From contig LSRY02000010.1 of the NCBI GenBank assembly GCA_001643675.2, positions 992,001 to 1,056,000 of the forward strand: a DNA stretch of 64,000 bases, in the 5' to 3' direction. This document shows positions 2,570-23,645 of the stretch, piece by piece. The translations under genes were made by a program, and so were the position numbers. How positions within the stretch are numbered: the stretch's first letter is position 1; every line of letters starts with the position of its first letter. The stretch is from Monocercomonoides exilis PA203. Lineage: Eukaryota; Protista; Preaxostyla. The notes under the pieces were generated by a model that worked only from the letters and a program-made list of their open reading frames with translations, did no database searches and had not been told where the DNA came from.

Positions 2570-5500
2570 ATGAGTAAATCTGAAGAAGAATGTTCTTTTC
2601 GAGACGAATCACGCAAATCAAACTGTATGATAGCAATAATAAAACTTCTTATATTTATTATTTTTAATGAAATTGATAATATTTATGTTGAAATGATTAA
2701 TTATCGAATATCAAGTAATTATTCATCCAGACATATTCTGCAACAGGTGCAAAAAACAGGTTATCGGAATTCGATACAAATGTGTTGATTGTGCTGACTT
2801 TGATTTATGTTCACAATGCGAGCCCTTTCGCACAACATTTCACAATCCAATTCACAAATTTTCTCGTATCGACAAACCTTTACAGCCTGGACAGCAACTT
2901 CTTGTTAATGATTTATCTCAGCCAGTATCAAATGGAACTCCTTTGTTTTGTGATCCTGTAGCGTTTCGCGCATGGCTGGAGCAAGCAGTCAAAGCGCCTG
3001 ACGGTGTTGAGACTTTAAAACAAATACGTGCAAGCCCCTATTTCATTCATTTTATAAGGTCCTTTGTTCCTCTACAAACTATATGGGATCATTTTGCAGA
3101 AACGTATGGACTACAACCAATAACGTTGAAATCTGCTTCATTGTCGCCTCTTTCTTTATCAGCTTTATCCCCTTCTTATAAATTTCCTGAGGCAGGCGAT
3201 TTCCCATCATTTGCAACTTTTCTTTTACAGCCGCGACCTTCTCAAAGTGTTTCTTTTCATTTGAAAACAAATGCACAACCTCAGCAATCTATTAAAGCTA
3301 ATTCAGTTCCATATTACACAGTGCCGGAACGCACCGAGAGCACTGATTTGCAGTCAAGAAATTATTCTGGGAATGTTACTCAAAGGCCCGCTTCTGCATC
3401 TGCAGTTCTGATTCCTTCGTCTTCGCGAGGGGCTCTTTCTCCGTTCGATAATTCTCCGAAGCCTCAAACGCCCTCGATTTCTGCTCTTTCATCTTCCGTT
3501 CCAGCCGACGAGGCAGCTGCTCCTCCAGATCAGATGCGCTGGCGTCCGGACTTGGGTGTTGCCCAGAAGACGCAGCGGCCGTCTCCCGGCTGCCCCGCAA
3601 ACACGCAGCTGCCTTCTCCGCTCTTCGCCTCTCTGCCACATTCGCCGTCAACCATATCAAACTCCCCCTTGTTGGCTCAACTTCATTCGCCGGCACAAAC
3701 ACAAGGATTTGTGTCACCTCGCCAACAGCAACAGCTTCAGAATCAGCATCAGCTTCAACAAATTCAGCAATCATCACAAACTCTACAACCACAACAAACA
3801 CTGCAATCACAACAATCACAACGTCCCATCCTTCCAAAGCACAAATCCACTCGCTCGCTGCCTGGCTCCTCGTCTTTGGAGCTTTCGTCGCATTCTCAGC
3901 CATTTCAATCACTTTATCGCCAGGTTCAATCTCCTTCTTCCTCCTCCTCCTCTTCTTCTGCTGCTGCTATATCATCATCACCACCTTCTTCCTCTGCTTC
4001 TTCTTCTTCTTCTTCATTATCACTGTCCCTCTCACCATCCACCCCTTCCTCCTCTGCCAAGCCTTATCCCCCTCTCTTCTCCTTGACTGCATCCACCACC
4101 CCTTCTGCCACACCGCCTGTGATGTCTGGACTCCGCGCCTCTTCTGCCCAGCTCCCGTTTCCACACGGAACTTCATCTTATTTCCGCAATTCGCCTTCTC
4201 CATCGTTTCTATCTAATAATAATACTTATAATAACAACAATAATAATAGTAATAGTTCTTTCAATCAGCATGTGAAATCTCCACGTACTCCTCTTCTGAA
4301 TGAGCATGGTTATACCCTTCCTTCTTCTTCTACATCTCCTTCCTCTTCCTCTTCTTCTTCCTTCTCCTCTTCTTCTTCCTTCTCCTCCTCTTCCCCCATC
4401 TCCCTCCTCACCCACCCAACACACACAAGAAGATCCTCTACCCCTCTTATCCCTCAGTCTGCCTCTGCCCCTCTTCCTCAAACAGACCTCGTCCAATCTC
4501 CTTCTCAGCACACCCTTCTGCCTCACACACACTCTTCCCTCGCTCTCTGTTCTTCTTCTTCTGCTTCTGCTTCTTCTATTTCTTCTTCTTATCCTTCTGC
4601 TTCATTTATTAACCCTTCTTCTGCTAATTTCTCATCCCCCATGCTTTCTCCATCGGCCATTCCATTTATTCCTAACAGACAAGACTCTTCTTCTTCTTCC
4701 TCCTCCTCCTTCTCCTCCTCTGCTTCTTCCTCTGCTTCCTTGTCTTCACCTTTATCCTCGTCTTCTCCGCCTTTTTCTGCCTCTCCTTATTCACTTCATT
4801 CACATTCTCTATCAGCAATGGCATCTTCTTCTTCTTCTTCCTCTTCTGTCTCCCCAACACTTAAATATCCTTCCATCATAAAGTCTTCTTCTTCCTCTTC
4901 CTCATCCTCATCCTCTTCATTTTTATCTTCTTCTTCTTCTGCTTCTGCTTCATCATCATCTTCTTCTTCTTCATTTTCTCCTTCCTCTCCTTCTCTTCTG
5001 TCAACTTCATTGTCAACCACACCCACTGCCTCTCCTTCAATCTCTTCTCCTCTCTTCAAACAGAACTTATTGTCTCCTCTTTCTTCTTCTACTTCTTTAG
5101 CTTCTTCTACTTATCCTGCTGCAACTTCTTCTTCTCCTCCTTTATCTTCTTCTTCTTCTTCTTCTTCTTCTTCTTTTTCTCCTTCTCCTCTTCCTCCTCC
5201 TCATTTTGTTCCTCCCTCTTCAAATCGAGATATTCATTTTGAATGTCCCATTCAATCAACCTCTTACAGCAAGGAATCTCGTTCATTTAACTCAAATGAT
5301 GACTTCTCTTCCCTTGAAACACTCAACAATACCTCTTCATTCAGTCTGCTGTTCCATCAGCTTTCTTTGAGCAAAGAAGCAGAAGCAGAAGCAGAAGCAG
5401 CAGAAGTGTCAACAACAACAAAAACAAAAACAAAAGCAACAAAACAACCTTTCAATCAGTTTGAAGAGAATCTTGTTTCTTCTCCGTTTTCTTCATCTGA

Positions 5501-8500
5501 ATTGCAACTTTCAAACAATACAGCAGCAAATTCTTCAGACGAAAAAGATGAATTTCAAAGGTATGCTTCTGATAGAATGCAATCAACAACATATGCTGAA
5601 ACTCTTAGTGGAATTAGCATCAACGACAATAACAATGTGGAAACGACATCAACATTATCATCAGTATCATCATCAGTATCATCAACTCCTCAGGCAGATG
5701 CAGACAACATTAATCAGATTGACAATAACAGTCGGAACAATCATAACAATCATATCAAACTAAACAGCGTAAGAGCATTTGACGATCTTCTTCGCCCTTT
5801 CCTCTGCTGCAAAACAGCCTTCACGCCTCCTTCCTTCCTTGTGCTGAGGGAGAAATACCAAAAGTTCTATTCACTTATTTCTCAGCTGTTCCATGGCATC
5901 TACTTCATCCGGCTGGCTCTTGTTCATCTTGTCGCTCGCACTTTCTCAACAGAAGCGCCTCAACTGCATTGCAATGTGGTGCAGGCAAGAAGAATAGGAC
6001 AAGAAGAAGATGGATTGAATGCAGAGTTGGATTCAGTATTGAATAAAGAGTTGGATTTGGATTTGGATTTGGAGTTAAAATCGACTTCTGCTTCTGCTTC
6101 TGCTTCTGCTTCTTCTTCGTCGTCACTTTCTTCATCTGAATCATTTGCATTTGACAATGATAATGATGCAAATTGTGTTTGTGGAAAAACATCTTCCCCA
6201 AAATTAAGTGAATTGCATTCTTCTTTGCATTCATCATCTGCCCCTTCTTCAACTGAAACAACCATTTCACACCCAAATAACCTCAAAAATGCCAAAAACA
6301 ATGAAATTTTCAATGAAACTCAGCCATTAAACATCTCACAGCTGTCAGATTTTGACTTCTTTGAGCACATGTTGTCTGTGATGACGCTCGAAGAAGGGAT
6401 TCAGAGGCTGCAGAGCGAGAAAGCATTGCCAGACAACATAGCAATGCTGCAGGTGGCTGATGATTTGAACGACAAGCTTCAGAAATACTGTTTGGAGGTG
6501 TTTGGTGAGTGTAATGAGCACAGAGGAGAGGAAGGAGAAAGAGAAAGAGAAAGAGAAGAAGGTGACGTTATTATTGATGGGGTTGCTGATAATGCTGATA
6601 AAGCTGGTGATTCTAATGTTGGTGGAATTTGTGATGTTTCAAATGAAATTGGCAGTGAATACACGAAGAATTCATTTTTAACTGAAAAAAGCATAAAAAC
6701 GGATAAGCCAGTAAATGATGAGCTATTCCAAGGAAGCAAAAATCCTTTTGCTTCTGAGTTTTCTTCAATTCCACCAGCAAACAACCAAATGAAGGCCTTG
6801 CTTACATTTCTATCAAAATACCCTTCAGAAAAAGAGAATCTTCAAATGAATCATAACAATGATGATAACAGTCATAGCATCAATTACAGTAATTTTATTA
6901 TTAATAGTAATAATAATAACAATAATAGCAATAACAATAGTAATAAACACAGCACAAACTCCACTGAGAAGGTTTCATCAGAGCCTTCTGCATGCATCTC
7001 CTATCCCGGCATCTCTCTAGTCGCTCTTCTGTCTATTGTTCAGTCTCTTTCCTCTTTCCACTCGAAATCTGCCCCAATCGGCGAAGAAGAGCTGAAAAAA
7101 GCTGTTTCTGTGATAGAGGCAGCGCCGCCGCTGACCGAAGAGACAGAAGAATGGATGAGGGGGCTGTGGCTGAAGATGCGGGAGGTGCTGGAGAAGATTG
7201 TGGTGGACAAGGAGAAGGAGATGATGGAGAAGGAGAAGGAGATGATGGAGAAGGAGAAGGAGATGATGGAGAAGGAGAAAAAGGAGAAGGAGAAGGAGAA
7301 GAAAAGGGGGATAATGGAGAAGATGGGGCAAATAGAGAAGACGGAGAAGAAGATGGACAAGATAGAGGAGACAGGGAAGAATAGCAAAACCAACAACATT
7401 GGATCGATCATATCAGTCGAAGCCAAAAGAGAGCCACTTGCTCTTCAACAGCACACGACTCAAGGGCAATCCGAAGCAGATGCAAAGTGTTCATTCGAAT
7501 CGGTTGCTTCTCTTCTCTCTCTCTCTCCTCCTGCGTCTCCTGCAGTCGGAAGATGGAGCCCCTCCGCTTTGTATCCGTTTGAGCTCCCGTCGCTTCTGCA
7601 GTCGCCGCCTCCACTGCAGGATGGGAGTGTCACAGCTAATGATGTCTTGTCTTTTGCGTCTTATTCTCCAACGGCTTCTTATTCGTCTTCTTCCTCTTCC
7701 TCTTCCTCCTCTTCTTCGTATTCTTCTTCGTTTCCTTCTTCCTCTTTGATTTGCTATCCATCGCTTTCTCTTGCGCCTTCTGCCATGAAGACTTCTTATA
7801 CCTCTGAAAACACTTCTTCATTATTGTCATCCTCGTCATCTTCTTCCTCTTCCTCTTCTAATTCTTCCTCTTCCTCCTCCTCTTCTTCTTCCTCTTCTTC
7901 AATCTCCAATATTGCCTCCACCACCACACTTGTGTGCAATGATTCCCCTCCTCTTTCTCTCCTCTCTCACTCACCCTGCGGCTTCTCTGAAGACTTTGCT
8001 TCACACAACACTCCAATCCATACTCATTCTCCTGCTTTTGCTTCTTCTCATTCATCATCATCTTCTTCTTCTTCTTCTCAATCTTCTTCTTCTCATTCCC
8101 ATTCTCATTCGCTTTCTGCTGCTTTGTTTCCGGACTTCACTTTTGAGCCGCTCAAAGACAGAACACCTCCTGTTTCTCCGGTTGGGCTGTATGACACGAT
8201 GAAATCAGAGGGATTTGCTCGTTTGTCTCCAATGTTGGTGGGGAGTGAGATTGGAAGAAGTAAAAATAATAATTATGATAATAATGTTTATGATAATGAT
8301 AATAATAGAAAGAATGATAAAGACAATAATATTGATAATATTGATAACATTGATAATAGCCATAAAAATTATACCAGTAGCAATTATAATAATAACAATA
8401 ACAATAATATCCTAAGTAACATCAGCAATATCAGCAATGTAAGCAGTGGAAGAAGAGAATGCTCTCCTTCGTTCCTGTCATCCCAAATGCTTTCTGCTGA

Positions 8501-9593
8501 GCAGTTGGCTTCTCAACATTTTGTGGACTCTTCAGATGGGCTGTGTGCAAAGGAATTGGCTGACGTTACAGAAACATATTTTCCTCGTTTAACTTCTCCG
8601 TCTCCGTCTCCTTCTCCTTCTTCTGTTTCTTCTTCTGTTTCTTCTTCTTCTTCCTCTTCCTCCTCTTCTTCTTCTTCTTCTTCGTCTTCTTCAACCTCTC
8701 CTTCAAATTCAGCGTTGTCTTCCACTGACAATAAGCAAGTGAGTGCAAATGCATCAAAGGCATTGAAGTTCTCAATCGATTGGATGAAGACTTTTTCTTC
8801 ATACTTCGACAACGTCAAGTTCATCTCCAAAAGCCGTCAAAACAAAGAAAATGCTGCAGATTCAAAGAAATTGCCTTCATCATCATCTTCTTCCTTTTCC
8901 TCTTCTAATTCTTCCTCTTCCTCCACCTCTCATTCTCCTTTCCCTTCACTTTCTCTTTCCCCTTCTTATCCTTCACAAGACCCACAACCCAACCCAAAAG
9001 GAAGTGTTACTCTTTTGCCTCCACCGTCATCCACAAAGCTGAGCGAGCTGCAAATGCCCATTCTGAACACAACTCCGCAGGCATTGCTGTCATTACAGGC
9101 ATCTCCATCACAATCAACTGCTTCTTCAGTCAATACATTTACAACTGCATCAGCAGCAACTCAGTCTATTTATCCAATCCAGACAAATAAGATGGCACAT
9201 TTTACTCAATTCAATCAATCAATGCAGTCAATGCAAAAAACCAATCCAACTCAATCGACTCAATCGACTCGGTCATCGTCTTATCCTCATATTCCCTCCC
9301 TCACTCTGCAGCCAGCCAACTCTTCTCTTTCACCTTCTCCCCTGTCTTCTTCATCTGTTCCTGTGTTATCTCTTTCTTCTCCTGCTTCACTAACATCTGC
9401 TATTCTTAATGCTGAGCAGACACGAAAGCACACTCCAGTGCAACGCCTTCCTCCTCCCCAGCTGTCTGCCCCTTGTTCTAATGCACATTTCTATCAATCT
9501 GGCTATTCGTATGTTTCTTCTTCTGACGCCCTTTCAAAAAAACAAGGTGTAACAATTCTTCCTCCTCCGCCTTTCCAACATCAACATCACTAA
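2570..9593 (+). CDS. ZZ-type zinc-finger protein with very long Ser/Asn-rich low-complexity body (~2310 aa); exons 2570-2624 and 2716-9593
   Basis: The 2943 ORF is open upstream to 2716 and reads HPDIFCNRCKKQVIGIRYKCVDCADFDLCSQCE..H..IHKF, a ZZ finger. Phase-1 intron GTATGA(2625)..AAG(2715) joins it to ATG 2570. Confidence 0.75.
7209..7279 (+). repeat. 21-bp tandem repeat x3 encoding KEKEMME
   Basis: aaggagaaggagatgatggag repeated three times in frame. Confidence 0.9.
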
Positions 9594-10340: not shown

Positions 10341-11366
10341 TTAAAGTTTCATCAATTTTGTCATCAAGTCAACAACACGGCATGAGTATCCCCATTCGTT
10401 ATCGTACCATGAGACAATTTTAACCAAGTTGTCCTTCACCATTGTGCATTGTGCATCAAAGATTGATGAGTGATGATTTTGGATGATATCAGATGAAACA
10501 ATTGGTTCTTCGCAGTATTCGAGAATTCCCTTCATTGGACCTTCAGCAGCGGCTTTCATTGCTGCGTTGATGGCTTCTTTTGAAACTGGCTTCTCAGCAA
10601 TGAATGTGAGATCGCAGCATGATCCAGTTGGAACTGGAACACGGAGTGCATATCCATCAAGTTTTCCCTTCAAAACTGGAATAACCTCACCAACGGCTTT
10701 GGCTGCTCCAGTTGTTGTTGGGATAACGTTGCATGCAGCATGACGAGCACGGCGTAAATCGTCGTGAATTTGATCGCAGATTCTCTGATCGTTTGTGTAT
10801 GCATGAACTGTGACCATCAGACCACGAACAATACCGAATGTATCGTTCAAAACTTTGGCAACTGGAGCCAAGCAGTTTGTTGTGCATGAAGCATTTGAAA
10901 CGCATTGGTGTTCTGGTTTCAAGTGTTCTTCGTTGACACCGCAAACGATTGTTGCGTCACATTGATCCTTTGTTGGGACTGTGATGATAACTTTCTTTGC
11001 TCCTGCTTTGATATGTCCATCATATCCGTCCTTCTTTGGTGTGGCGCGTGCTCTGTAGATTCCGGTTGATTCAACAACAACATCAATTCCCATTGGTCCC
11101 CATGGAAGTTCAGATGGGTCCTTTCTCTCGTTCAAAACCTCAATCAGATCATCTCCAACTTTTAATTTGTTTTCTGCTTCAATGAATTCAACTGGCTCAT
11201 TGAATTTTCTGTAAACTGAATCCCATTTCAACAAATGAGCAAGAGCCTTTCCATTAGCGAGATCGTGAATTGCAACTACCTTGAACAAGTCTTTTCTTTG
11301 ACGAAGGATACGGAACACAACTCTTCCAATTCTGCCAAATCCGTTAATCGCAACTTTAATTGACAT
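10341..11366 (-). CDS. GAPDH: Glyceraldehyde-3-phosphate dehydrogenase, intronless, bacterial-like type
   Basis: INGFGRIGR, catalytic ASCTTNCL, SWYDNEWGYS; S-loop HDDLRRARHAA. Confidence 0.98.
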   Translation of the reverse strand: MSIKVAINGFGRIGRVVFRILRQRKDLFKVVAIHDLANGKALAHLLKWDSVYRKFNEPVEFIEAENKLKVGDDLIEVLNERKDPSELPWGPMGIDVVVESTGIYRARATPKKDGYDGHIKAGAKKVIITVPTKDQCDATIVCGVNEEHLKPEHQCVSNASCTTNCLAPVAKVLNDTFGIVRGLMVTVHAYTNDQRICDQIHDDLRRARHAACNVIPTTTGAAKAVGEVIPVLKGKLDGYALRVPVPTGSCCDLTFIAEKPVSKEAINAAMKAAAEGPMKGILEYCEEPIVSSDIIQNHHSSIFDAQCTMVKDNLVKIVSWYDNEWGYSCRVVDLMTKLMKL

Positions 11367-11574
11367 GTCTAAGCCTTATGATCTGATCTACAACCCATTT
11401 TTCATGTGATGAAGAATGAAAAATACATATTATTGATCAATATTTTGATTTGTTTCAAGAAAATTTTCCAAAAATAAAAATAAAGTTTGAGTTACAACGC
11501 AACTTCAACTTTAATTTATTAGAAATAAATATAGAAAATGAATATTAACGATTACTAATAAAAAAATCAAATTA

Positions 11575-13756
11575 CTACGACATTGTCACTATTCTCTTTG
11601 AAGAATCAGAGAGAACAGAAACAATTTCTTTGGAAGTAGCTGCTCTTCCAACTCTAACTTTTTCTTTCAATTTCAGTGTAACTAGGCAAGTAATGCATGA
11701 CCAAATTGTCACTCCCATTCTTTCCAAATCTCTCAGAATATTAACCGTTTCATTTGTAATTGTTGTCATTTCAACGGAATCGCCCATAAATATAATCTTT
11801 CCTGGGATGACAGGAGAAGATGCAAGCGTCTGTAGCAACCCCCTCGCCAGGAGTTTGCCAAGAGTATCGTCGCCGAGAGTGACAACAGAGTTCTTGTAGA
11901 ACCACACAAGAGACATATCCAAAGTTGGAGGCTGCGGAGCTGTTTGAACAAACTCCGCTTTTGACGATGGTGCTGAAGATGACGATGATGATGCATCAGC
12001 TGATGGCTTCGAAGATGAAGAGGCAGACTGAGGAGGATTCAGTGTGACGGGAGCAACCTGCACCGAATGAGGAAAGCCTGGCCCCAAATTACAATCTGAC
12101 ATCTGAACAAGCGCATTCGCAATTTCTTCGCCAGTCTGCATCGCCATAATTTTGCTTGCCTCTTCTTCGTTCTGAACCACAAGAATAGCTCCTTCTGCTT
12201 CTTGGGATGGGGATCTCTGCTGCATCCACTGCGAAACAGCCGCGTTGCGTGCTGGGTCTGCCTCTTCGACCCTTCCGATGATCTTCACAGACTCCTTCAG
12301 CATACCTTCGGGCAGTCGCTCCTGGATCTTCTGGGCAATGGCGCTGACTTCTTCTATCGTGCCTTCGACAGCCATCAGCAGTCCGCCAGACGTCTGCGCG
12401 TCGAAAACAAGTAGGCGCTGGGGCTCCTGAATGGGCTGCGAAAAGAGGGTGGACGCAGACGCGAAGGAGACGTTGTTGAACGACGACGTCGAGTAAACGC
12501 TCAACCCGCGCTGCTGCAGAAGCTTCACGACTCCTGGGAGTAGCGGAAGTTGGTTGGCATAGATCTAATTATTTCATATAAATATGAAATATTAAATATG
12601 TTGTTGCATTTATTTTTTTTCGCCAGAAAATAAATTGATTAGAAAAGGGAATACGCGTGTCAAAAGTTTTGTAAAGAAAGGTAATGAGGAAATTGAAAGA
12701 AACAATTTATTAAAAACTTCGTTAAAACTCTATAAATAAAAGAAGCATACAGTTGCAACAAGGTTATTTGTTTCTTTTTCTCCTTTACGGATCATCTTTT
12801 TCAGATGGCCTGCCAACCCAAAGCCTGTTACGTCTGTCATTGCGTGAATTTTCGATCGAATATGATCGTCTCCTGTAACAACTTCACATGCAATTCGATT
12901 CAGTGCTGTCATCGATTCAATTGCAGCTTTGGACGTTTCTTCAGGACAAACTTGTTCGCCTCTTTTCATGGCAGATGTTGCAATTCCAGTTCCCAATGGC
13001 TTTGTTAGCAGGAGCCAATCACCAGCTTTGACACCAACATTTCGGATAAATTTTTGTGGATGCACAACACCTGTTACCGCAAGACCGAAGCTTTGTAAAA
13101 TTTGAGTCAAATTTTTTAAATAAATATATATGTTGTAAATAATGAAATATTTATAAGAAATAAACAAACATTGGTTCGCTGACATCAATTGTGTGCCCTC
13201 CTCCAATTATTATTCCAGATTCTGAGGCTTTTGTTCTTGCACCTTTAAAAATAGCCTTGAGTGTGTCCGCAGGAAGTTTCCCTGTTGGAAATCCAACAAT
13301 AGACAGTGCAGTAATTGGTTTTCCTCCCATTGCATAGACGTCACTTAATGCGTTTGCAGCAGCAATTTTTCCGTAAGTCTCAGCATCATCAACAATGGGA
13401 GGGAAAAAATCCGTGGTATTAATTATAGCATTATCGTCATCCAGTTTATATACGCTTGCATCATCTCCTGTTTCAATTCCAACAAGAAGAGACGAGTCAG
13501 TCGATTCTTGCTGCGAAGATGGAATTAATGATTCAAGAAGCTCTGCTCTAAATTTTCAAAAGAATAATTTGCGATTAAACATATATGTGAACCTAACAAA
13601 CTTTACTTTGCATGCACATCCCAAGCCTGAAGCATATTGAGTTAATTTGACTTCACCAGGAAGCGGAAGTTTTGGTGTTCCAGAAGATAAAGCACTTGAA
13701 AAACTTGAAGCACTTGAATTTGAATTTGAGATGGTTCTTGGTACAAAACAAGTCAT
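11575..13756 (-). CDS. selD: Selenophosphate synthetase (selenide, water dikinase) fused to a C-terminal YedF/DsrE-like domain; exons 13756-13602, 13547-13170, 13090-12751, 12564-11575 (620 aa)
   Basis: Spliced product reads LTQYASGLGCACK, GDDASVY, TTDFFPPIVDD, AANALSDVYAMGG, GGGHTID..EPIFGLAVTG, LTKPLGTG, TDVTGFGLAGHL, DAQTSGGLL. The C-terminus has LGDDTLGKLL..PGKIIFM..LERMGVTIWSCITC. Three GT..AG introns give a 1863-nt open frame. Confidence 0.93.
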
Positions 13757-14010
13757 TTCAATTCAATAAGGAAAAAGAAACAATGCACTTTAAACACAAA
13801 TTTCGAAATTATCCCATTGACAAATGGAAAACTCGAATGTAAATATGGGAAAGAAATTTTGAATATGATTTTTTAATGATCAGTTTTAACTATTTATATA
13901 TAATGAAAAACAAGCTATTTTTATCAAAATTTTTTGTGTTGTCTCTGCAAATAAAATCTTCAGAAACTTTTATAAATGTTATTGTGATTTTTTTTTTCTT
14001 CACATATCGA

Positions 14011-15827: not shown

Positions 15828-18800
15828 TCAACAAAAGCTCATTTTTGAAGAGGATTCGTTGGCCTCCTGAGTTCTTGGGTCATTCATATCAACAGCATCG
15901 GACATTGTGAGCATTGCAGCTTCTGGTGGAAATATTTTGATCAGCTCTCTTTTGACCTCCACAAGGCTTGGCCGATCCGATGGATTGTGCGACACACATC
16001 GATGAATCACCCCAAAAAGCTTTGATGAGTTAATTACTTCAAGATTTTGCCTCTCACCATTCACAATCTTCTGTCCTGCTATTCCTGCCTCATACTCTCC
16101 AAACGGGATTTGAAGGGTCAGACACTCCCACAGCATCATCCCAATCGAAAATGCAACTGACTCCTTTGTCGCTCCCATGTTCTTGTTCATCAACAGTTCT
16201 GGCGCCTTCCACCTCAGGCACTCTTTTTTAAAGGCATCTTCATCCTCAAATGCAGATGATGGCAGAGAGTCACTATCATCATCATCATCACTGGCAGATG
16301 TGACAACAGTTGATGATGAGATGGATGATGAATCAGAATCATCTGATAAAAGGTCTGAGTGAATCACGATGCAGATCACCATGTGCTCAGAGAACAATAC
16401 AATGTGAGGACTCAGATTGGCCAATGACTGAAGCTTGTTTTCCATCTCATCAAAGGAGTGGAGAGCAAGGTTGGCCACCCAGAACAAGATTTGGGCAGCT
16501 GTCATCTCCCTCTCCTTCAAAGAGCCGATTGCCATCTCTTTCTTCTCGTTCCTTCCATGAAGAAGCATGAACAGCGAATCCCTCAAATCCACAATCAGTT
16601 TCTCATGAGGAGATGAACAGGCCATTGCATCCACCAGATTCGACATCGATGAAGTGGTCGGACAAAGACTTTCTGTTCGAACAAATGTGGTATCTGTGTC
16701 TGAAGTGTCTGTTGTTGAAGTTGATGAAATAGATGGAGATGGCGTTCTCTTCCTTATCTCTTCTTCTTTCTCATCCACCTTCTCCAGCATCCATTCTGGG
16801 ATCTTGTCTGAATCCTTTCCCAATATATATTCAGTGGAGCCACTCTCGCTCAAAAGATACTCTTCAGATTCTGAATGCGCCAAACTTTTCTCACATACTT
16901 TTTTCTTTATCCTCTCACCATTCTTCTTCTCTGCCTCCCTCTCAGCCCTTCTCCACTGTGCCTCAGGTGACATCTCCATCGTCACCATCTCAAATGCCTT
17001 TGGATCCTTCTTAACAGTATCTTCAACAATCTCTTTATATTTTTTTGTTTCATTCTTTGCTTTTTTCCAACGAACAGCAAGAATAATTGAAATAATCAAA
17101 ACAATTATAAACAACAACACAAATACAACAATTATAATCATTGCCCATGAAGATATATTTCCATTCGAATTTCCTCCTTCAGTTTTTCTTTCATCTCCAT
17201 TTGACTTTGCTTCACTCCTGTTCTTCAGAATGAATGACTGAGTAGATGAAGGAGCATTTGAATTCCCAAACATAACAGAAACGCTCACCTCAACATCATC
17301 TCCACAACTGCTGATCAGATCTTTTCCCACGCTCCCCTCGACTTCTGTTTCCGATAAGAATCCATTTCCATCAAAACTATGTTTTTCAATCTCTTTCTCT
17401 TCTCCCTTCTTCTTCACAACTGAGAATGACAGATTGCATGGAACAAGAAGAAATCCTTTGAATGTCAGCTTCATTCTATCTGTCTCTTCTTTTGCTTCCA
17501 CGCTCCCCAGAGCAGGAATGAAGAAAGGAGATGATCTTTCTTCTGCTATCCCTCCTAGTTTGCATCCTTCATTTAACATCCAAAGTGATGTCTTTGGCAA
17601 AACTCCATCTCCTCCTTTCAAACTCTTCACATTCAATGTTCCTGAATCTGAACAGATGATATTCCTTCTCAATGATGGATATCCTTCAATTAATGGATTA
17701 TTGTTCTCAAATAACCCCATCTCAATTGAAACGCTTCCTTCACTTATTGTTATTCCTCCTTCTGGTGAATTTGTGATTGTTGCATCTTTCATCTCCAGAA
17801 ACCCATTATTCACATCAACAAGCGATCCATTCCATTTGCACACATCATCATTTGCTGAATTCTTTTTACTCCGAAACTCATCATCAAACCCAGTCAGTTC
17901 ACATGTTTGCAAAGACAGAGATGACCCAGTGGATATTTTAACCAAGGTCCCTTTCTTTGAAGGTGTGAAACATCTTTCAAATGAACAATTCAACATTTGG
18001 CTTCTTGTTTTTTCACAGGCTGACTCAACCATACAGGAATTGATGCTGTTGTTGCTGGTGATGTTTGAGAATGATGAAATGCCCATCTGCAGAACAACCC
18101 TTTCTCCAACATCTTTCTCATTTGAAAGTTGATTCTTCTCTTTTATCAGAGAAATGAAGCTTCCCCCATTCAGCAGAATATCTGATGCTGTCAGTTGAGT
18201 GATATTCACTGATGAACCTGATTCAACAATAATTGAATTTTCAGTAGTTTTTATCTTTGATACCTTGATCTGATTTATTGTTGCAATCGTTCCGCTTCTG
18301 AAGAAAAATAACTGATGTGTCGCGCTTATCACATTTATTGAGCCCTTCACTATCTCAAATGAGCCACCTTCAATCACAAAAAGGCTTGAATTGAGTATGA
18401 ACTCAATTGATGAAGATTGCATGATACAATTTTCAAATGTCAATGAACCATTCAATTGCTTCATAATTGCTGTGTGCTCAGCTAAGAAATGCTCGCCAAA
18501 TGAAAACAAACAACTTTCAACCAAACATTCATTTTCAAACATTATTATCCAAGATCCGTCAAATTTCTTTTCAATCAATGAATTGAAATGAATTATTGAT
18601 TGCTGTTTGGTGATTGACTTCAGCGTGAGATTGCTAATGACTGTCGGTTCAACAACCACTGTCGACGAATCAATACAGATTGCATTGAACAGCCCAATTT
18701 GCACATGCCTCACTCCGTGTGACACACTTCTGCATGGATTGTCCTGCTTCCCACACTGGTTGCTGTCTTCAAACTCTATCGACACAAACACCTGCGGAAT

Positions 18801-21800
18801 GTACAGAAATGTGATCAGCGGGATGAGATCAATGTCCGTCAATGTTAAGTCGCTTCCACAAATCGATGTGTTCATACGAAGAGATGGTTGCGAAAAGTCA
18901 AGAGCAAAAAGTGTTTCATTGATCTGCTTATCGATCGAATAGCAGTTAATAAACATATCCTTCCCCATGAATGCACTGTTCATCATGAATTGAACACCCG
19001 CGATGTGAAGAAGAAGCGGGCTTGAAGGGGTTTGAAAAGGAGCATCTGGGTCACAAAAGTCCAGCATCATTCCGCCTCCTCTCCCTGTGCTCTCAGAACA
19101 TGTGCACAACACAAATGTGCAATTTTTCACTTCCAGATTCGATTCCTCATTCTTCATATGCATCATCAGTCCTCCTCCTCTGTTGCTTTGCCGACTGAGA
19201 CAGTTCCAGAATGTGCAATTCTCCATTTCACAATCCAATCCAGTAAACTCTTTCACACCCAAAAACACTGATCCTTCCTCAGTTCTCGACACATTCTCGA
19301 CTGTGACAGATGACAAGTTCATTGATGGACGATTCACAGGTTTGCTGTTGGAGATTCTGATCAAGTTATTTGGCTGGTGTTCAGAAGGGAAAACTGATAT
19401 GAAGCAATCAGAAGAAACAGACGAATTTGTGAATGATGTGTTGTGCATGTGCACAGAATGGAAATTGGCAGATAGCCGCAGAAATGGGTTTGCAAGAGAC
19501 AAAGTCACAACGGTACAGTGTTCCAGGGAGACATCTCCCTCCACGATGTCGAGCGCACACAAGGAAGAAGATGACGAGGTGTCAGATGGAATGAATTTGC
19601 AAAGAGAGAAAGACACTGAATGGATAGAGTGGACGAACGATTTGTAGAACTCAAATCTGCTCGGAAGATTGATCAAAATGTTCGAAAAGAAAGCATTCAC
19701 CGAGTTGGAGATCAGCGAGCCATCATCTGAGAAAGCTCCATCATCAGAAACGAACAAGTGCACAGCCTCATCACCTCCTTCTATTGAAATCAAAGGCTGA
19801 TTCTCATCGGACGGTTTTGAAGGCAACAAAGAAACTGAATGTTTGAGAGAAGCTGATCCTTCCACTTTGATGATCGATTTCTCCAAAGCAACTGGAGAAA
19901 ATCGCATTTTGATAATGTGATCAATCGACGAACATGGCACTTCTGAAAATCCACATCCACTGAAGTCTCTTCCTCCCTCTTTCGAAATAAATCCATTCCC
20001 ACTCCAATTTGACCACAAATACACTACCAACGGAATCACATATTCTTCTCCCGTTGTCATCCCTTCCCATCCACACAACTCATCCAACGATCCCAGTTCC
20101 TCTGCACTCATCCCCCATTTGAAATGATCCTTGCTCGCAATCTCACTTAGATCCCATCCTGAGACAAATATGTTCTTCCCCTTCCAAGCATTGCATTTCT
20201 CAAATATCATCTCTTCTAGTACTAATTTATCTATTTCATCTGGCAGCACTACAAACATTCCTCCTCCTAATCCTTTACCTCCATCCTCAACATCCCCTGA
20301 TGGAACTTCACATTCAGAAAAATTCACATTTTTCATCTCCAAGCTTCCTCCACCTCCAACTGATATCATCAGCCCTCCCCCTCTGAGTCCTTCTTCGTTT
20401 TTGCACTTTGATGATATGTTCGTGTTCTTGATCGAAATGGAACCTCCACCATTGATTTCTACTTTCATGCATCCTCCACTCCCTCCCTCATTTGCAATCT
20501 CTGTCAATGTGCATCCCTCAACTGTCACTCGTGATGCTCCGTTCACGTTGATTGGTGTAAGTGCTGTGAAAGTGACATCCTTAGAAACAACCAACCCTGT
20601 GAGCTCCAATTCACCTCCGCTCACATGAATCAATGAAAATACCACAGAGTTCGCAAGATTATCAGCCGAAAATACAATCGAAACATTGCTCAAAGAGAGA
20701 AAGATTGTTGACTGAATAATCGAAGATATTGAGGAAGGAAGAATACAAGGAAGAACAAAAGAGAGAAAAGACAGAGAAAAGCTGCCAATGCATTGAATGA
20801 TATTGTTGCAGTCAGAAGAGATATTGTCAGTCAAGGCAACATTCACAGAGGGATATTGACTCGAAGATGATGCCAAAGAAGAAGAAATTGATATTTGGGA
20901 TGTTGGCAACGAAGGCACCACAAACGGATTCTTGATCAATACTGACGACATCACTTCCATTGCATTTACAGACTCATTCACTCTCTCACGTATGCAGAAA
21001 TCGATTGTTGAACAACAAAAAGCCGAATGTCCACAATGCGAATGATCAAAACCATTCCCCTTTATGAATATGGGGGATCTCAAGTCACATAGATATACGT
21101 GCAACGGAATCGCAGGCATAACTTTCCCATTCTCGCATCCAGATAATTCATCTCCAAAATTTATGCAATTATCATTTTTTATGAATCTGATTGATGATCT
21201 GTCAATCTTCTCTTTCAACAAAATTCTACTTTCACAGAAGATAAAAATATCTCTTCCATAAGAAGCTTTATTTAGGTTCTCAACTGAAAACGTAACATTT
21301 TCACATATTGTGAATTTTGATTCAATGGAGTCAACATCAATGTACAATCCTCCTCCTCTTCCTTTTCCAATAGGATTTCCTGCATAGCATCCTTCAAATT
21401 TTGATGTTCCATTCACTATTAATTCTCCACGAGAAATCATTCCTCCTCCACTGTTTTCCACTGATATATTTTCAAAATGACAGTTTTCAATAACAACTCT
21501 TCCCGAGGATGCATTGCGCCACTCAATTACACCTCCATTTCCAGACATCCTTTGAATCAGCGAAAAGTTTGTGTTAACCACATATAAAACTGAACTTAAC
21601 TGATTGTCATTACATGAAATGAAACTGTCCGACAAGAAATTCATGCTTGTTATCCCGACTCCTGATAATTGCACACTCCCTCCACGTACATTTATAAAAG
21701 ATGCTTCAAGCTGTAATGAACTTTCAATTGATGATATTTCACATTCTTCCATTGTCAATGATCCATCTCCATCCATCACCACAAATGGCATGCTTGCACT

Positions 21801-23645
21801 ACTCTCTGCATTACTTTGAAGCATTGTCACGTTCTGAACACAAAGAGTTCCAGATGCAACATTAATAACAGATAATAACGATGATGCTGATTGCACAACA
21901 CATTCATTCTTTGACAATCCACAAACACAGAATTCTCCGGAAGAAATTGATATTTGTTCTTCTTGAAATACACTCGGTCGCAGGATCAGAGTTTTATTCA
22001 AGCTGCCTGTTATTCTTCCAAGTGAATATTTGATTGAGCGACATAAAGGAGCAAACCCACACTGCCCATGATCAATTCCAACCGAATAATCGGCTGTTAT
22101 TTGATAATTGTTCTCATTGTTTCTCAGCCACGAACTCAGATCTGATTTGCTCGAACATTCATAGAATCCATCATTGCATCTTGTGATCCTTGGGGAAGCA
22201 CTTGAAGAATAACAATCAGTAATGTTGTTTTCATCAATTGTATTCCATTGCAGAATAAATGCGAGGTGAACATCGTGACCATAAGCATCATCTTCGGATG
22301 TACTATTATAGAAAATGCAATATTTCAAATTTATCGAAGGGTGATCTGACCCTTCTTCATCACCAATCAAAATACAAGGCGAATAGCCCTTGCTGTAGCT
22401 ATTTTGCATCAAACAATTTGAAATTAATATCAACGTGCTGACTCGCCATATATGAGAAACTGATGAATATTCAACTGAACTTGCATTGTCAAAAATACAC
22501 GAAACAGTAATACAAGGATTCTTTTTACATTTTGCCCAATAAAAACATGTTTTACTTTTCGAAGAGCAATTAGTAATTACTGAAGAGGAAATTACTCCAG
22601 AATCGATATCATATAATTTGAACCCACCTGTTTCTCCTAGCGCCGAACAATCATTAACAATGCATTCATCAGAAACAAACATTCCATTTGAATTATTCAT
22701 ATAAACTGCACCAGCTTCGGCTTTTGAGATGCATTGAATGAATGAACAACGATGTAATCTTATTGATGCATTTCCTTCTCCGTAAAGAGCACCACCTGTT
22801 TCATCACTTTGAACATTGAAGATGTCATCATTAAACTCATTTTTTCCTTCTGAAAATGGCAGCCTTTCATTATAAGTTGTATAGCATTTCAAAAACGATG
22901 AATTACTGCAATAAAAAGAGATCATTGCAGGAGATAGAATTCCACCAGAATATGGACTTTCGCAACCTATCATAACTATTCTTTCCACCAGGACTCTGTC
23001 AGAACATCCGATTCCATTGTCATATTTTTTAATTGTTTTTTGTAAAGTGATGTTTTCGAACAAAGTGTCAGATACAGATATTGATGAAAGGCAATTCGAA
23101 GAAAGAAATGGACCATTGCCAAGAATTCTAAATGATGAAATTCTCGAAGATGATAAGCACAGTTCGCAACAATGAGGAAGAGCTTCCTTTGAATGATGAG
23201 TAATCAAAGACGGTAATTGGCCACTCTGAAAAATAAAATTAAATGAAATATTTCTGAGATACATTCGGCTTGCAGAACAGTCAAGCAGATTTTTCGATTG
23301 TGAAAAGACAGAAAACGAACAACTACAAATACTCAATTGCGAATGATATTCCACTGATGCAAAATGTTTTAAAGTTTCCATGTTATAGGCAAGTGCAGAT
23401 AAGAAAATTGTTGAGTTTCGAACAACAACAAATGAATGGTCATTTTCCAATTCACCTTGTTTGGCCTTCTCTTTGGTCTTCTGCTCAAATGATAATCTTT
23501 GCTTTTCTGAACTCAAAATAGTTGTTGCATGGCCATCAAAATATGTTCTATCGAGGTCCTGCCCAGAAACCAACAAATAAAACACGAGGTGCCACAAAAC
23601 GATCAGATTCATAGAATGTTGATAATCTGTAATTCTATTATGCAT
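15828..23645 (-). CDS. Large type-I membrane receptor-like protein (2605 aa): signal peptide, Pmp-like beta-helical ectodomain, one TM, degenerate TKL/TK-like kinase C-lobe
   Basis: N-terminal hydrophobic segment; GGA(L/V)Y and GRGGG motifs plus D-x3-CG-x3/4-C-x-S repeats; TM WAMIIIVVFVLLFIIVLIISIILAV followed by RWKK; RWKAPE, FSIGMMLWE, IPF, DRPS; no HRD or DFG. Confidence 0.85.
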   Translation of the reverse strand: MHNRITDYQHSMNLIVLWHLVFYLLVSGQDLDRTYFDGHATTILSSEKQRLSFEQKTKEKAKQGELENDHSFVVVRNSTIFLSALAYNMETLKHFASVEYHSQLSICSCSFSVFSQSKNLLDCSASRMYLRNISFNFIFQSGQLPSLITHHSKEALPHCCELCLSSSRISSFRILGNGPFLSSNCLSSISVSDTLFENITLQKTIKKYDNGIGCSDRVLVERIVMIGCESPYSGGILSPAMISFYCSNSSFLKCYTTYNERLPFSEGKNEFNDDIFNVQSDETGGALYGEGNASIRLHRCSFIQCISKAEAGAVYMNNSNGMFVSDECIVNDCSALGETGGFKLYDIDSGVISSSVITNCSSKSKTCFYWAKCKKNPCITVSCIFDNASSVEYSSVSHIWRVSTLILISNCLMQNSYSKGYSPCILIGDEEGSDHPSINLKYCIFYNSTSEDDAYGHDVHLAFILQWNTIDENNITDCYSSSASPRITRCNDGFYECSSKSDLSSWLRNNENNYQITADYSVGIDHGQCGFAPLCRSIKYSLGRITGSLNKTLILRPSVFQEEQISISSGEFCVCGLSKNECVVQSASSLLSVINVASGTLCVQNVTMLQSNAESSASMPFVVMDGDGSLTMEECEISSIESSLQLEASFINVRGGSVQLSGVGITSMNFLSDSFISCNDNQLSSVLYVVNTNFSLIQRMSGNGGVIEWRNASSGRVVIENCHFENISVENSGGGMISRGELIVNGTSKFEGCYAGNPIGKGRGGGLYIDVDSIESKFTICENVTFSVENLNKASYGRDIFIFCESRILLKEKIDRSSIRFIKNDNCINFGDELSGCENGKVMPAIPLHVYLCDLRSPIFIKGNGFDHSHCGHSAFCCSTIDFCIRERVNESVNAMEVMSSVLIKNPFVVPSLPTSQISISSSLASSSSQYPSVNVALTDNISSDCNNIIQCIGSFSLSFLSFVLPCILPSSISSIIQSTIFLSLSNVSIVFSADNLANSVVFSLIHVSGGELELTGLVVSKDVTFTALTPINVNGASRVTVEGCTLTEIANEGGSGGCMKVEINGGGSISIKNTNISSKCKNEEGLRGGGLMISVGGGGSLEMKNVNFSECEVPSGDVEDGGKGLGGGMFVVLPDEIDKLVLEEMIFEKCNAWKGKNIFVSGWDLSEIASKDHFKWGMSAEELGSLDELCGWEGMTTGEEYVIPLVVYLWSNWSGNGFISKEGGRDFSGCGFSEVPCSSIDHIIKMRFSPVALEKSIIKVEGSASLKHSVSLLPSKPSDENQPLISIEGGDEAVHLFVSDDGAFSDDGSLISNSVNAFFSNILINLPSRFEFYKSFVHSIHSVSFSLCKFIPSDTSSSSSLCALDIVEGDVSLEHCTVVTLSLANPFLRLSANFHSVHMHNTSFTNSSVSSDCFISVFPSEHQPNNLIRISNSKPVNRPSMNLSSVTVENVSRTEEGSVFLGVKEFTGLDCEMENCTFWNCLSRQSNRGGGLMMHMKNEESNLEVKNCTFVLCTCSESTGRGGGMMLDFCDPDAPFQTPSSPLLLHIAGVQFMMNSAFMGKDMFINCYSIDKQINETLFALDFSQPSLRMNTSICGSDLTLTDIDLIPLITFLYIPQVFVSIEFEDSNQCGKQDNPCRSVSHGVRHVQIGLFNAICIDSSTVVVEPTVISNLTLKSITKQQSIIHFNSLIEKKFDGSWIIMFENECLVESCLFSFGEHFLAEHTAIMKQLNGSLTFENCIMQSSSIEFILNSSLFVIEGGSFEIVKGSINVISATHQLFFFRSGTIATINQIKVSKIKTTENSIIVESGSSVNITQLTASDILLNGGSFISLIKEKNQLSNEKDVGERVVLQMGISSFSNITSNNSINSCMVESACEKTRSQMLNCSFERCFTPSKKGTLVKISTGSSLSLQTCELTGFDDEFRSKKNSANDDVCKWNGSLVDVNNGFLEMKDATITNSPEGGITISEGSVSIEMGLFENNNPLIEGYPSLRRNIICSDSGTLNVKSLKGGDGVLPKTSLWMLNEGCKLGGIAEERSSPFFIPALGSVEAKEETDRMKLTFKGFLLVPCNLSFSVVKKKGEEKEIEKHSFDGNGFLSETEVEGSVGKDLISSCGDDVEVSVSVMFGNSNAPSSTQSFILKNRSEAKSNGDERKTEGGNSNGNISSWAMIIIVVFVLLFIIVLIISIILAVRWKKAKNETKKYKEIVEDTVKKDPKAFEMVTMEMSPEAQWRRAEREAEKKNGERIKKKVCEKSLAHSESEEYLLSESGSTEYILGKDSDKIPEWMLEKVDEKEEEIRKRTPSPSISSTSTTDTSDTDTTFVRTESLCPTTSSMSNLVDAMACSSPHEKLIVDLRDSLFMLLHGRNEKKEMAIGSLKEREMTAAQILFWVANLALHSFDEMENKLQSLANLSPHIVLFSEHMVICIVIHSDLLSDDSDSSSISSSTVVTSASDDDDDSDSLPSSAFEDEDAFKKECLRWKAPELLMNKNMGATKESVAFSIGMMLWECLTLQIPFGEYEAGIAGQKIVNGERQNLEVINSSKLFGVIHRCVSHNPSDRPSLVEVKRELIKIFPPEAAMLTMSDAVDMNDPRTQEANESSSKMSFC

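What the first reader, a model, noticed from the sequence alone, without database searches (positions are those of the whole stretch)
11575..13756. Spliced bacterial-type SelD fused to a YedF/DsrE-like Se/S-relay domain: candidate selenium-utilisation system in a eukaryote
Seen: four exons with canonical introns rebuild a 620-aa protein. The synthetase closely follows E. coli-type SelD (LTQY..GCACK, DFFPPIVD, GGHTI..EPIFGLAVTG) rather than animal SPS1/2. After a Ser/Pro-rich linker, residues encoded by ~11913-11575 match the DsrE-like half of the bacterial selenium-metabolism protein YedF (LG.G/DD.LGK.L, P.KIIF, L.ELE..GV.I.SC.TC, K..VG). Known: in anaerobic bacteria yedF clusters with selD, including genomes using Se for labile cofactors or unknown traits rather than Sec. 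Inference: a selD-yedF pair was laterally acquired, fused and intronised, giving one polypeptide that could hold selenium on the CxxC cysteines and channel it to or from the synthetase site.
Basis: partly seen in the sequence, partly recalled or inferred. Interest (0 to 1): 0.88.

Follow-up and report, generated by a model that had tools for sequence, protein, structure and literature searches.

The report
SelD fused to YedF-type selenium domain
The selenophosphate synthetase gene of the mitochondrion-less protist Monocercomonoides exilis carries an unannotated bacterial YedF-type cysteine domain at its end; several other anaerobic protists share this fusion, which ties the uncharacterised YedF family directly to the first step of selenium use.

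Summary
A four-exon minus-strand gene (13756-11575) encodes a 620-aa protein. Its exons match 100% the public protein MONOS_5022, 'Selenophosphate synthetase [Monocercomonoides exilis]'. RNA contigs from four runs of one study show one spliced transcript with exactly the three predicted junctions, and it runs through the C-terminal domain.

Residues about 35-397 are a bacterial-type SelD with a Cys active-site loop (GCACK). Residues about 503-620 match the DsrE-like half of bacterial YedF:
- TIGR03527 gives E 1e-22, below its cut-off.
- The CxxC motif is invariant.
- The AlphaFold model is confident and its best PDB matches are all DsrE/YchN/TusD proteins.

Standard annotation misses this domain. 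I found no paper describing it.

The fusion also occurs in Paratrimastix, Stygiella (a jakobid), Ergobibamus and three unnamed eukaryotic contigs. M. exilis already has a published selenocysteine pathway in which this gene is the only listed SPS. It is therefore a new SPS fusion architecture serving a known pathway, not a newly found selenium system.

The most likely role of the domain is selenium capture or reduction and hand-over to SelD. That role is inferred, not shown. The bacterial donor is unresolved.

This scan had already noted other selenium genes on other pieces of this genome.

The parts
11450..13807 (-). Extent of the spliced mRNA as seen in RNA contigs. The 5' UTR is about 51 nt and the 3' UTR at least 125 nt.
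   Evidence: one contig per run in four runs, with no mismatches and three joints.
13602..13756 (-). Exon 1: start codon, a 34-residue N-terminal extension beginning M-T-C-F, and the SelD glycine-rich loop.
13745..13756 (-). Conserved N-terminal M-[ST]-C-F motif (Cys3). It is present in all six eukaryotic fusions whose N-terminus is known and absent from bacterial stand-alone SelD.
   Evidence: alignment A4.
13607..13621 (-). Catalytic loop G-C-A-C-K (Cys47, Cys49, Lys50), which aligns with E. coli SelD Cys17, Cys19 and Lys20. It is the Cys type, not Sec.
   Evidence: alignment to 3u0o; invariant in A3.
13548..13601 (-). Intron 1 (54 nt, GT..AG, phase 2).
   Evidence: joint 13547|13602.
13170..13547 (-). 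Exon 2: SelD AIRS N-domain (DFFPPIVDD, GGHTI).
13091..13169 (-). Intron 2 (79 nt, GT..AG, phase 2).
   Evidence: joint 13090|13170.
12751..13090 (-). Exon 3: the first part of the SelD AIRS_C domain.
12565..12750 (-). Intron 3 (186 nt, GT..AG, phase 0).
   Evidence: joint 12564|12751.
12247..12564 (-). Exon 4, first part: the C-terminal third of SelD (residues 292-397). Local GC3 reaches 0.75.
11932..12246 (-). Exon 4, middle: a linker of about 105 residues (398-502), Ser/Pro-rich. It is mostly predicted disordered, with two low-confidence helices. Its length varies among species.
   Evidence: pLDDT 36-76.
11578..11931 (-). Exon 4, end: the YedF-type DsrE-like domain (residues 503-620).
11686..11697 (-). 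C-I-T-C (Cys581, Cys584): a CxxC motif invariant across 8 eukaryotic and 57 bacterial sequences.
   Evidence: A1; A2.
11575..11577 (-). Stop codon TAG.

Best explanation
This is MONOS_5022, the selenophosphate synthetase of Monocercomonoides exilis. It is a real, spliced and transcribed gene.

Its product joins three parts: (i) a complete bacterial-type, Cys-active-site SelD; (ii) a flexible linker of about 100 residues; and (iii) a domain of about 118 residues homologous to the DsrE-like, CxxC-bearing half of bacterial YedF. The TusA/SirA-like half of YedF is absent.

The protein most likely makes selenophosphate for the organism's published selenocysteine pathway. Inferred mechanism: the tethered CxxC domain captures selenium from a thiol-bound or oxidised form, as a selenotrisulfide or perselenide on Cys581/Cys584. 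It then reduces it and hands it to the mobile N-terminal Cys loop of SelD (Cys47/49), in cis or across the SelD dimer. Toxic free selenide need not accumulate. This is the same logic as the known NifS-SelD fusions, with a different delivery module.

The fusion is one family shared by several anaerobic protists (Preaxostyla, Ergobibamus, Stygiella). It nests among bacterial SelDs, which implies bacterial ancestry and later spread among anaerobic eukaryotes.

Shown: gene structure, transcription, both homologies, the fold, residue conservation and the distribution. Inferred: enzymatic activity, selenium binding, the direction of transfer and the history of transfers.
For: Gene and transcript.

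SelD identity and type:
- TIGR00476 347.5 bits and NF002098 335.9 bits, both above cut-off.
- best PDB match is E. coli SelD.
- the catalytic loop and the Asp/Asn ligand columns are invariant.

YedF-type domain:
- TIGR03527, E 1e-22.
- own HMM, E 1e-30.
- CxxC invariant in 65 sequences.
- pLDDT above 90 over residues 502-620.
- the top 13 PDB matches are all DsrE/YchN/TusD family, probability 0.99-1.0.
- TM 0.71 to YedF clusters.

Conservation of the fusion in other anaerobic protists. Transcript-derived full-length ORFs exist for Paratrimastix and Stygiella.

Single origin is compatible with both halves:
- SelD constrained monophyly gives lnL +39.9, p-AU 0.975, and SH-aLRT 98 against NifS-SelD rows.
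- YedF domain gives lnL +11.5, p-AU 0.695.

Sec pathway context: M. exilis SelB, SepSecS and SBP2, with MONOS_5022 the only listed SEPHS.

Bacterial linkage of yedF with selD: PMC5322559, and adjacency in L083 and L011.

Precedent for delivery-module fusions: NifS-SelD.
Against: - No biochemical function is known for any YedF, so the selenium-relay role is extrapolated from DsrE/TusD sulfur relays and from genomic association.
- The TusA-like partner domain, with its CPxP cysteine, is missing.
- The domain scores below the TIGR03527 and Pfam DsrE cut-offs.
- Some bacterially conserved positions have diverged in the eukaryotic copies: the Gly of CGxC, and SNM after the VG motif.
- The linker is long and disordered, and no contact between the domains was tested.
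- P. pyriformis may also have a NifS-SelD, so the fusion need not be the only SPS in every species.
- The trees are quick searches with long eukaryotic branches and no eukaryotic SPS2 or archaeal outgroup.
- RNA support is from assembled contigs of one study.
Confidence: 0.6

Rival explanations
1. The C-terminal CxxC domain is a redox maintenance or protective module. It keeps the SelD catalytic cysteines reduced, or it buffers and detoxifies excess selenide in an oxygen-sensitive cell. It does not deliver selenium.
For: The CxxC sits at a strand-to-helix junction, the typical position of a dithiol/disulfide redox motif. Lin et al. proposed a redox or detoxification role for YedF. All organisms that carry the fusion are anaerobes or microaerophiles.
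Against: The fold is DsrE/TusD-like, which is a sulfur-carrier fold, not thioredoxin-like. Physical fusion to the enzyme that consumes reduced selenium parallels NifS-SelD delivery fusions. No data separate delivery from protection.
Confidence: 0.2
2. The domain acts downstream of or beside SelD, for a non-Sec selenium trait such as the labile selenium cofactor of molybdenum hydroxylases marked by YqeB/YqeC. The fusion would then mark a second selenium pathway in these protists.
For: In bacteria yedF and selD co-occur also in genomes with the third selenium trait. Earlier notes of this scan report spliced YqeB and YqeC genes in this same genome. S. salmonicida has homologs of that marker gene.
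Against: I did not check the YqeB/YqeC notes here. M. exilis has a complete Sec pathway that needs an SPS, and only this one is listed. Co-occurrence of the fusion with YqeB/YqeC in the other protists was not examined.
Confidence: 0.12
3. The C-terminal domain is a decaying passenger with no present function, or it handles sulfur rather than selenium.
For: It scores below the family cut-offs and has lost the TusA-like half. DsrE-family proteins are classically sulfur carriers.
Against: The CxxC and two glycines are invariant, and the fold is predicted with high confidence, across lineages as distant as Metamonada and a jakobid. In every case the domain stays attached to SelD.
Confidence: 0.06
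4. Gene-model or assembly artefact: two genes wrongly joined, or bacterial contamination.
For: The culture is polyxenic (PMC12308965). A GC3-rich patch lies in exon 4.
Against: SelD C-terminus, linker and DsrE-like domain lie in one uninterrupted exon. Three spliceosomal introns are removed in the RNA contigs. The same architecture appears in independent transcriptomes and genomes. Comparable GC3 peaks occur in other genes of the window.
Confidence: 0.02

Closest known systems
Bacterial SelD (selenide, water dikinase; TIGR00476 / NF002098; E. coli SelD, PDB 3u0o)
   Same: There is full-length homology over residues 35-371 and scores are above both curated cut-offs. The Cys-x-Cys-Lys loop and the metal-ligand columns are conserved.
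   Different: It has a 34-residue N-terminal extension with a conserved Cys3, three spliceosomal introns, and a C-terminal linker plus an extra domain of about 220 residues.
YedF, sulfurtransferase-like selenium metabolism protein (TIGR03527)
   Same: The C-terminal 118 residues align to profile positions 72-192 with an invariant CxxC. The predicted fold is DsrE-like. It is associated with SelD.
   Different: It lacks the N-terminal TusA/SirA-like domain and its CPxP cysteine. It scores 78 bits against a cut-off of 110. The Gly of CGxC is replaced. It is covalently fused to SelD and found in eukaryotes, where YedF homologs were reported absent. It resembles the bacterial DsrE-only 'short YedF' proteins such as P0025, P0026 and the L011 ORF.
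NifS-SelD (NifS-SPS) fusions of bacteria and protists (Mariotti et al. 2015; Spironucleus salmonicida)
   Same: A selenium-supplying module is fused to a bacterial-type SelD and occurs in anaerobic protists through lateral transfer. These bacterial fusions are the nearest SelD relatives, at 50-56% identity.
   Different: Here the module is a DsrE-like CxxC domain, not a PLP-dependent lyase. It is C-terminal, not N-terminal. No bacterial protein with this fusion appeared among the best hits of the exhaustive search.
DsrE / TusD / YchN sulfur-relay proteins (PF02635)
   Same: Same predicted alpha/beta fold.
   Different: Sequence similarity is only marginal (Pfam E 0.03). It has a CxxC pair rather than the single relay Cys of DsrE/TusD. 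Oligomeric partners are unknown.

Membership tests
SelD / selenophosphate synthetase (TIGR00476, NF002098) | Whole-protein score above the curated cut-off | tested here: met
   P0153, which is identical to the four exon translations, scores 347.5 bits (cut-off 125) and 335.9 bits (cut-off 299). The exons scored separately.
SelD / selenophosphate synthetase (TIGR00476, NF002098) | N-terminal glycine-rich loop with catalytic Cys/Sec and Lys (E. coli Cys17, Lys20) | tested here: met
   G-C-A-C-K at residues 46-50 aligns with E. coli G-C-G-C-K and is invariant in A3.
SelD / selenophosphate synthetase (TIGR00476, NF002098) | AIRS and AIRS_C domains with conserved Asp/Asn ligand columns | tested here: met
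   PF00586 and PF02769 hits. Asp81, Asp98, Asn117, Asp121 and Asp264 lie in invariant columns of A3. Equivalence to the E. coli ligands rests on the alignment and on my knowledge of the SelD structures.
SelD / selenophosphate synthetase (TIGR00476, NF002098) | ATP-dependent synthesis of selenophosphate from selenide | not testable with these tools
   Needs an enzyme assay or complementation.
YedF (TIGR03527, two-domain selenium metabolism protein) | Score above the curated cut-off (110 bits) | tested here: not met
   77.7-80.9 bits.
YedF (TIGR03527, two-domain selenium metabolism protein) | N-terminal TusA/SirA-like domain with CPxP motif | tested here: not met
   The profile match starts at position 72. 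A sub-HMM of the TusA-like part finds nothing significant in any linker (4.7 bits or less). The AlphaFold model shows no such fold.
YedF (TIGR03527, two-domain selenium metabolism protein) | C-terminal DsrE-like domain with CxxC (CGxC) motif | tested here: met
   C-I-T-C at 581-584, with both Cys invariant in 65 sequences. The Gly is not conserved in eukaryotes.
YedF (TIGR03527, two-domain selenium metabolism protein) | Genomic association with SelD | tested here: met
   It is fused to SelD in one exon. Bacterial adjacency is seen in L083 and L011.
DsrE/DsrF-like family (PF02635) | Pfam gathering score | tested here: not met
   13-15 bits against 22.7.
DsrE/DsrF-like family (PF02635) | DsrE-type alpha/beta fold | tested here: met
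   AlphaFold pLDDT is above 90. The top Foldseek PDB hits are 1jx7, 2fb6, 1l1s, 2pd2, 3mc3, 2hy5 and 2d1p, with probability 1.0.
Vertically inherited eukaryotic SPS2 | Closer to eukaryotic SPS than to bacterial SelD | tested here: not met
   PDB scores are 238 bits to E. coli SelD, 162 to Aquifex, 95 to human SPS1 and 83 to Leishmania SPS2. All best database and genome hits are bacterial. No tree with eukaryotic SPS2 was built.
Known SPS fusion classes (NADH-dehydrogenase-like, NifS, methyltransferase, Plasmodium extension) | Extra domain is one of these and lies N-terminal of SelD | tested here: not met
   The extra domain is DsrE-like and C-terminal. The list of known classes is from PMC4561486.

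The most novel reading that the evidence does not exclude
The SelD-DsrE-like fusion is a self-sufficient selenium-activation module that arose once and spread by lateral transfer among anaerobic protists of different supergroups. Its CxxC domain, together with the conserved N-terminal Cys3 arm, takes selenium directly from selenite-derived selenotrisulfides. That would make a NifS-type selenocysteine lyase unnecessary. It may feed both selenocysteine synthesis and a bacterial-type labile selenium cofactor pathway (YqeB/YqeC) in a eukaryote. As a Rosetta-stone fusion it would give the first functional assignment for the YedF family.
Probability: 0.25. Interest if true: 0.72.

Novelty: new variant of a known kind. 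Interest (0 to 1): 0.55.

Why it matters
YedF is one of the few widespread selenium-linked bacterial proteins that still has no known function. A natural covalent fusion of its CxxC half to SelD, kept across distant anaerobic protists, is strong genomic evidence that this domain works directly with selenophosphate synthesis. It also offers a simple single-polypeptide system in which to test that.

It corrects two statements in the literature. Lin et al. 2015 reported that YedF homologs are undetectable in eukaryotes. Mariotti et al. 2015 listed the known SPS fusion classes, and this one is not among them.

It adds another laterally spread 'anaerobe toolkit' gene shared by metamonads and the jakobid Stygiella. 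It does not reveal a new selenium system: the Sec pathway of M. exilis is published.

Tried and rejected
1. TusA remnant in the linker. The segment around residues 415-445 looked like the second strand and helix of the YedF TusA-like domain. A sub-HMM of that domain gave 4.7 bits or less in every linker. AlphaFold shows only two low-confidence helices there. Not supported.

2. GC-rich patch in exon 4 (GC3 0.75, against 0.16-0.28 in exons 1-3) as a sign of chimerism or recent transfer. Other long genes in the window have local GC3 peaks of 0.67-0.9. Not informative.

3. Finding more fusions by a word-based search with the C-terminal region. It returned only the query, so it was insensitive.

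4. Donor search. The YedFs adjacent to selD in L083 and L011 rank 136-139 of 147 against the eukaryotic-domain HMM. The domain tree gives no supported bacterial sister. One NifS-SelD locus (L006) has no yedF neighbour. Short YedF P0026 is not preceded by SelD.

6. Sequence search of PDB with residues 400-620 found nothing. The fold search was needed.

7. Rfam on L001-L003 gave no hit.

8. The supplement of PMC6759080 is not held.

9. Joined step. Exons were searched one by one by reference. Full-length comparisons used the stored public protein P0153. The split genes on L004 and L005 were likewise read only exon by exon and left out of the SelD trees.
Full report
**Observation**

The minus strand between 13756 and 11575 holds a four-exon gene.
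- Exons: 13756-13602, 13547-13170, 13090-12751 and 12564-11575.
- Introns: 54, 79 and 186 nt, all GT..AG.
- Coding length: 1863 nt, or 620 codons plus TAG.

Each in-frame exon was used by reference. The four translations match one stored public protein, P0153, at 100% identity and at consecutive positions 1-51, 53-177, 179-291 and 292-620. P0153 is 'Selenophosphate synthetase [Monocercomonoides exilis]', MONOS_5022, KAH7828147.1 / XP_067732004.1. All full-length analyses below used P0153.

**Transcription**

Four metatranscriptomic runs of one study each contain a single contig of about 2.03 kb. It lies on 11450-13807 without mismatches and skips exactly 12565-12750, 13091-13169 and 13548-13601. 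SelD, the linker and the extra domain are thus on one spliced mRNA. The last 329 codons, covering the SelD C-terminus, linker and extra domain, are one uninterrupted exon. These are assembled contigs from one study. They show presence of the full form, not absence of minor forms.

**The SelD part**

- P0153 scores 347.5 bits on TIGR00476 (cut-off 125) and 335.9 bits on NF002098 (cut-off 299). The archaeal-type model reaches only 171.6 of the 291 bits needed.
- Against solved structures it scores 238 bits to E. coli SelD, 162 to Aquifex SelD, 95 to human SPS1 and 83 to Leishmania SPS2.
- The loop G-C-A-C-K (residues 46-50) aligns with E. coli Cys17/Lys20. The Asp/Asn ligand columns are invariant in alignment A3.

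**The C-terminal domain**

- Residues about 496-616 match TIGR03527 (selenium_YedF) at profile positions 72-192 of 194, with E about 1e-22 and 78-81 bits. This is below the 110-bit cut-off.
- Pfam DsrE gives only E 0.03. This explains why public records list only the AIRS domains.
- An HMM I built from 86 full-length bacterial YedFs gives 96 bits, E 1e-30.
- In a 65-sequence alignment (8 eukaryotic, 57 bacterial) the invariant columns are Gly527, Cys581, Cys584 and Gly597.
- AlphaFold2 on that alignment gives pLDDT above 90 for residues 502-620. The CxxC sits at a strand-to-helix junction.
- The best PDB fold matches are all DsrE/YchN/TusD proteins, with probability 1.0 and TM by target 0.55-0.73.
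- The ESM-Atlas structural search points to YedF clusters (TM 0.71).
- The TusA/SirA-like half of YedF, with its CPxP cysteine, is absent.
- Bacteria also have DsrE-only 'short YedF' proteins of about 116 aa that pass the TIGR03527 cut-off.

**Distribution**

An exhaustive HMMER search of 1.84 billion representatives with exon 4 found few proteins matching both the SelD C-terminus and the YedF-like domain. Together with a second search and cluster look-up, the fusion occurs in:
- M. exilis.
- Paratrimastix pyriformis: a transcript-derived complete ORF (P0151) and a genome model (P0152).
- Stygiella incarcerata, an anaerobic jakobid in Discoba (P0154, P0270).
- Ergobibamus cyprinoides, in Fornicata (P0046, a fragment).
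- A JGI metagenome organism (P0001, on L001-L003).
- Two unnamed eukaryotic contigs with introns: L004 (GC 33%, about seven exons) and L005.

L005 shares the positions of M. exilis introns 1 and 2. No bacterial protein with this fusion was among the best 150 hits, where a two-domain match would rank high. All six known N-termini start with M-[ST/Q]-C, mostly M-S-C-F, on a 25-35-residue extension that bacterial SelDs lack.

**Evolution**

The nearest SelD relatives are bacterial NifS(N-terminal)-SelD fusions at 50-56% identity. In GTDB genomes the best identities are 47-48%, in Bacteroidales, Lentisphaeria, Zixibacteria, Calditrichaceae and Caldisericaceae.

- In a tree with 58 such rows, the six eukaryotic fusions lie on one side of a branch with SH-aLRT 98.
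- With 80 taxonomically broad bacterial SelDs the free quick search split them. The tree constrained to one eukaryotic clade was 39.9 lnL units better (p-AU 0.975).
- For the YedF-like domain, the four Preaxostyla rows form a 99% clade. Holding all eight eukaryotic rows together was 11.5 lnL units better (p-AU 0.695).

One origin of the fusion is therefore the best-fitting reading for both halves. Caveats are long branches, short searches and no eukaryotic SPS2 outgroup. The presence in a jakobid as well as in metamonads suggests transfer between anaerobic eukaryotes.

The bacterial donor is unresolved. Natural precursors do exist. In Desulfovirgula thermocuniculi selD is followed after 19 nt by a full yedF. 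In a Caldisericaceae MAG, NifS-SelD is followed after 128 nt by a DsrE-only YedF.

**Functional context**

- Karnkowska et al. 2019 report Sec-tRNA synthesis enzymes and SelB in M. exilis.
- The supplement of Novák et al. 2023 lists SEPHS = MONOS_5022 (the only one), SEPSECS = MONOS_2984, SelB = MONOS_6967 and two SBP2 genes.
- Unchecked notes of this scan add a tRNA-Sec gene, PSTK, Sec-type thioredoxin reductases, SelW, and spliced YqeB and YqeC genes elsewhere in the genome.

So this enzyme most likely feeds an ordinary Sec pathway, and possibly a second selenium trait.

**Mechanism (inferred)**

From my knowledge of SelD biochemistry, its affinity for free selenide is poor and delivery proteins such as NifS-like lyases are thought to supply selenium. 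NifS-SelD fusions embody this. DsrE/TusD-fold proteins carry persulfide sulfur on a cysteine.

I propose that the tethered CxxC domain captures and reduces selenium and passes it to the SelD Cys loop. The flexible linker, which varies in length from about 30 to 105 residues, would give the needed reach. Rival roles are redox protection, service of a non-Sec trait, and a functionless passenger. These are weighed under the rival explanations.

**Comparison with the literature**

- Mariotti et al. 2015 list SPS fusions with NADH-dehydrogenase-like, NifS and methyltransferase domains and the Plasmodium extension, and describe the prokaryotic fusions as N-terminal.
- Lin et al. 2015 state that no significant YedF homologs were detected in eukaryotes.
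- Eight full-text searches found no description of a SelD-YedF or SelD-DsrE fusion. Subscription-only papers are not covered.

**Verdict**

This is a new variant of a known kind: a new, conserved SPS fusion architecture that standard annotation does not show. It sits in a gene and pathway that are already known.

Noticed in passing
window 13745-13756 (-); L004:954-1094; L005:483-632: All eukaryotic SelD-YedF fusions with a known N-terminus begin M-[ST/Q]-C (mostly M-S-C-F-V-P), on a 25-35-residue Ser/Thr/Pro-rich extension that bacterial SelD lacks. It could be an extra relay cysteine or an acylation site.
   Followed up: partly
window 10341-11366 (-): An intronless 341-aa GAPDH ORF lies directly downstream on the same strand. 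Its ATG is only about 85 nt from the 3' end of the SelD mRNA contigs. Its origin was not examined.
   Followed up: no
window 12200-12564 (-): There is a sharp GC3 shift inside the gene: 0.16-0.28 in exons 1-3 and up to 0.75 at the start of exon 4. Similar local GC3 peaks (0.67-0.9) occur in other long ORFs of the window, so this looks like a genome-wide property.
   Followed up: partly
P0152 versus P0151 (Paratrimastix pyriformis): Genome model P0152 (580 aa) carries an extra insert of about 39 residues, with a repeated GSHVSAQV segment, that the transcript-derived P0151 (541 aa) lacks. This is probably an unspliced intron or a mis-modelled exon.
   Followed up: no
Supplement of PMC10703272 (PAPYR_8347/8348): The SEPHS entry for P. 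pyriformis has a Caldithrix SelD best hit with E = 0 and 'Aspartate aminotransferase, SelD' domains. This suggests the species also has a NifS-SelD besides the SelD-YedF fusion.
   Followed up: no
L083:6037-7654; L011:3860-6564: These loci look like bacterial precursors of the fusion. In Desulfovirgula thermocuniculi selD is followed after 19 nt by a full-length yedF. In a Caldisericaceae MAG, NifS-SelD is followed after 128 nt by a 118-aa DsrE-only YedF.
   Followed up: yes
L005:483-1424 versus window exons 1-3: The unnamed contig from SRR13490895 (GC 51%) has exon boundaries at the same residues as M. exilis (52/53 and 178/179). These introns therefore predate the split of the two organisms.
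   Followed up: partly
P0228 (EukProt Stenamoeba stenopodia): This 416-aa SelD has no extra domain and nests inside the bacterial NifS-SelD clade next to a metagenome sequence (SH-aLRT 99). It may be bacterial contamination of the transcriptome or an independent transfer.
   Followed up: no
window 2943-9593 (+), 15828-23645 (-), 58565-63103 (-): There are very long intronless ORFs (2216, 2605 and 1512 aa) around the gene. They were not analysed.
   Followed up: no
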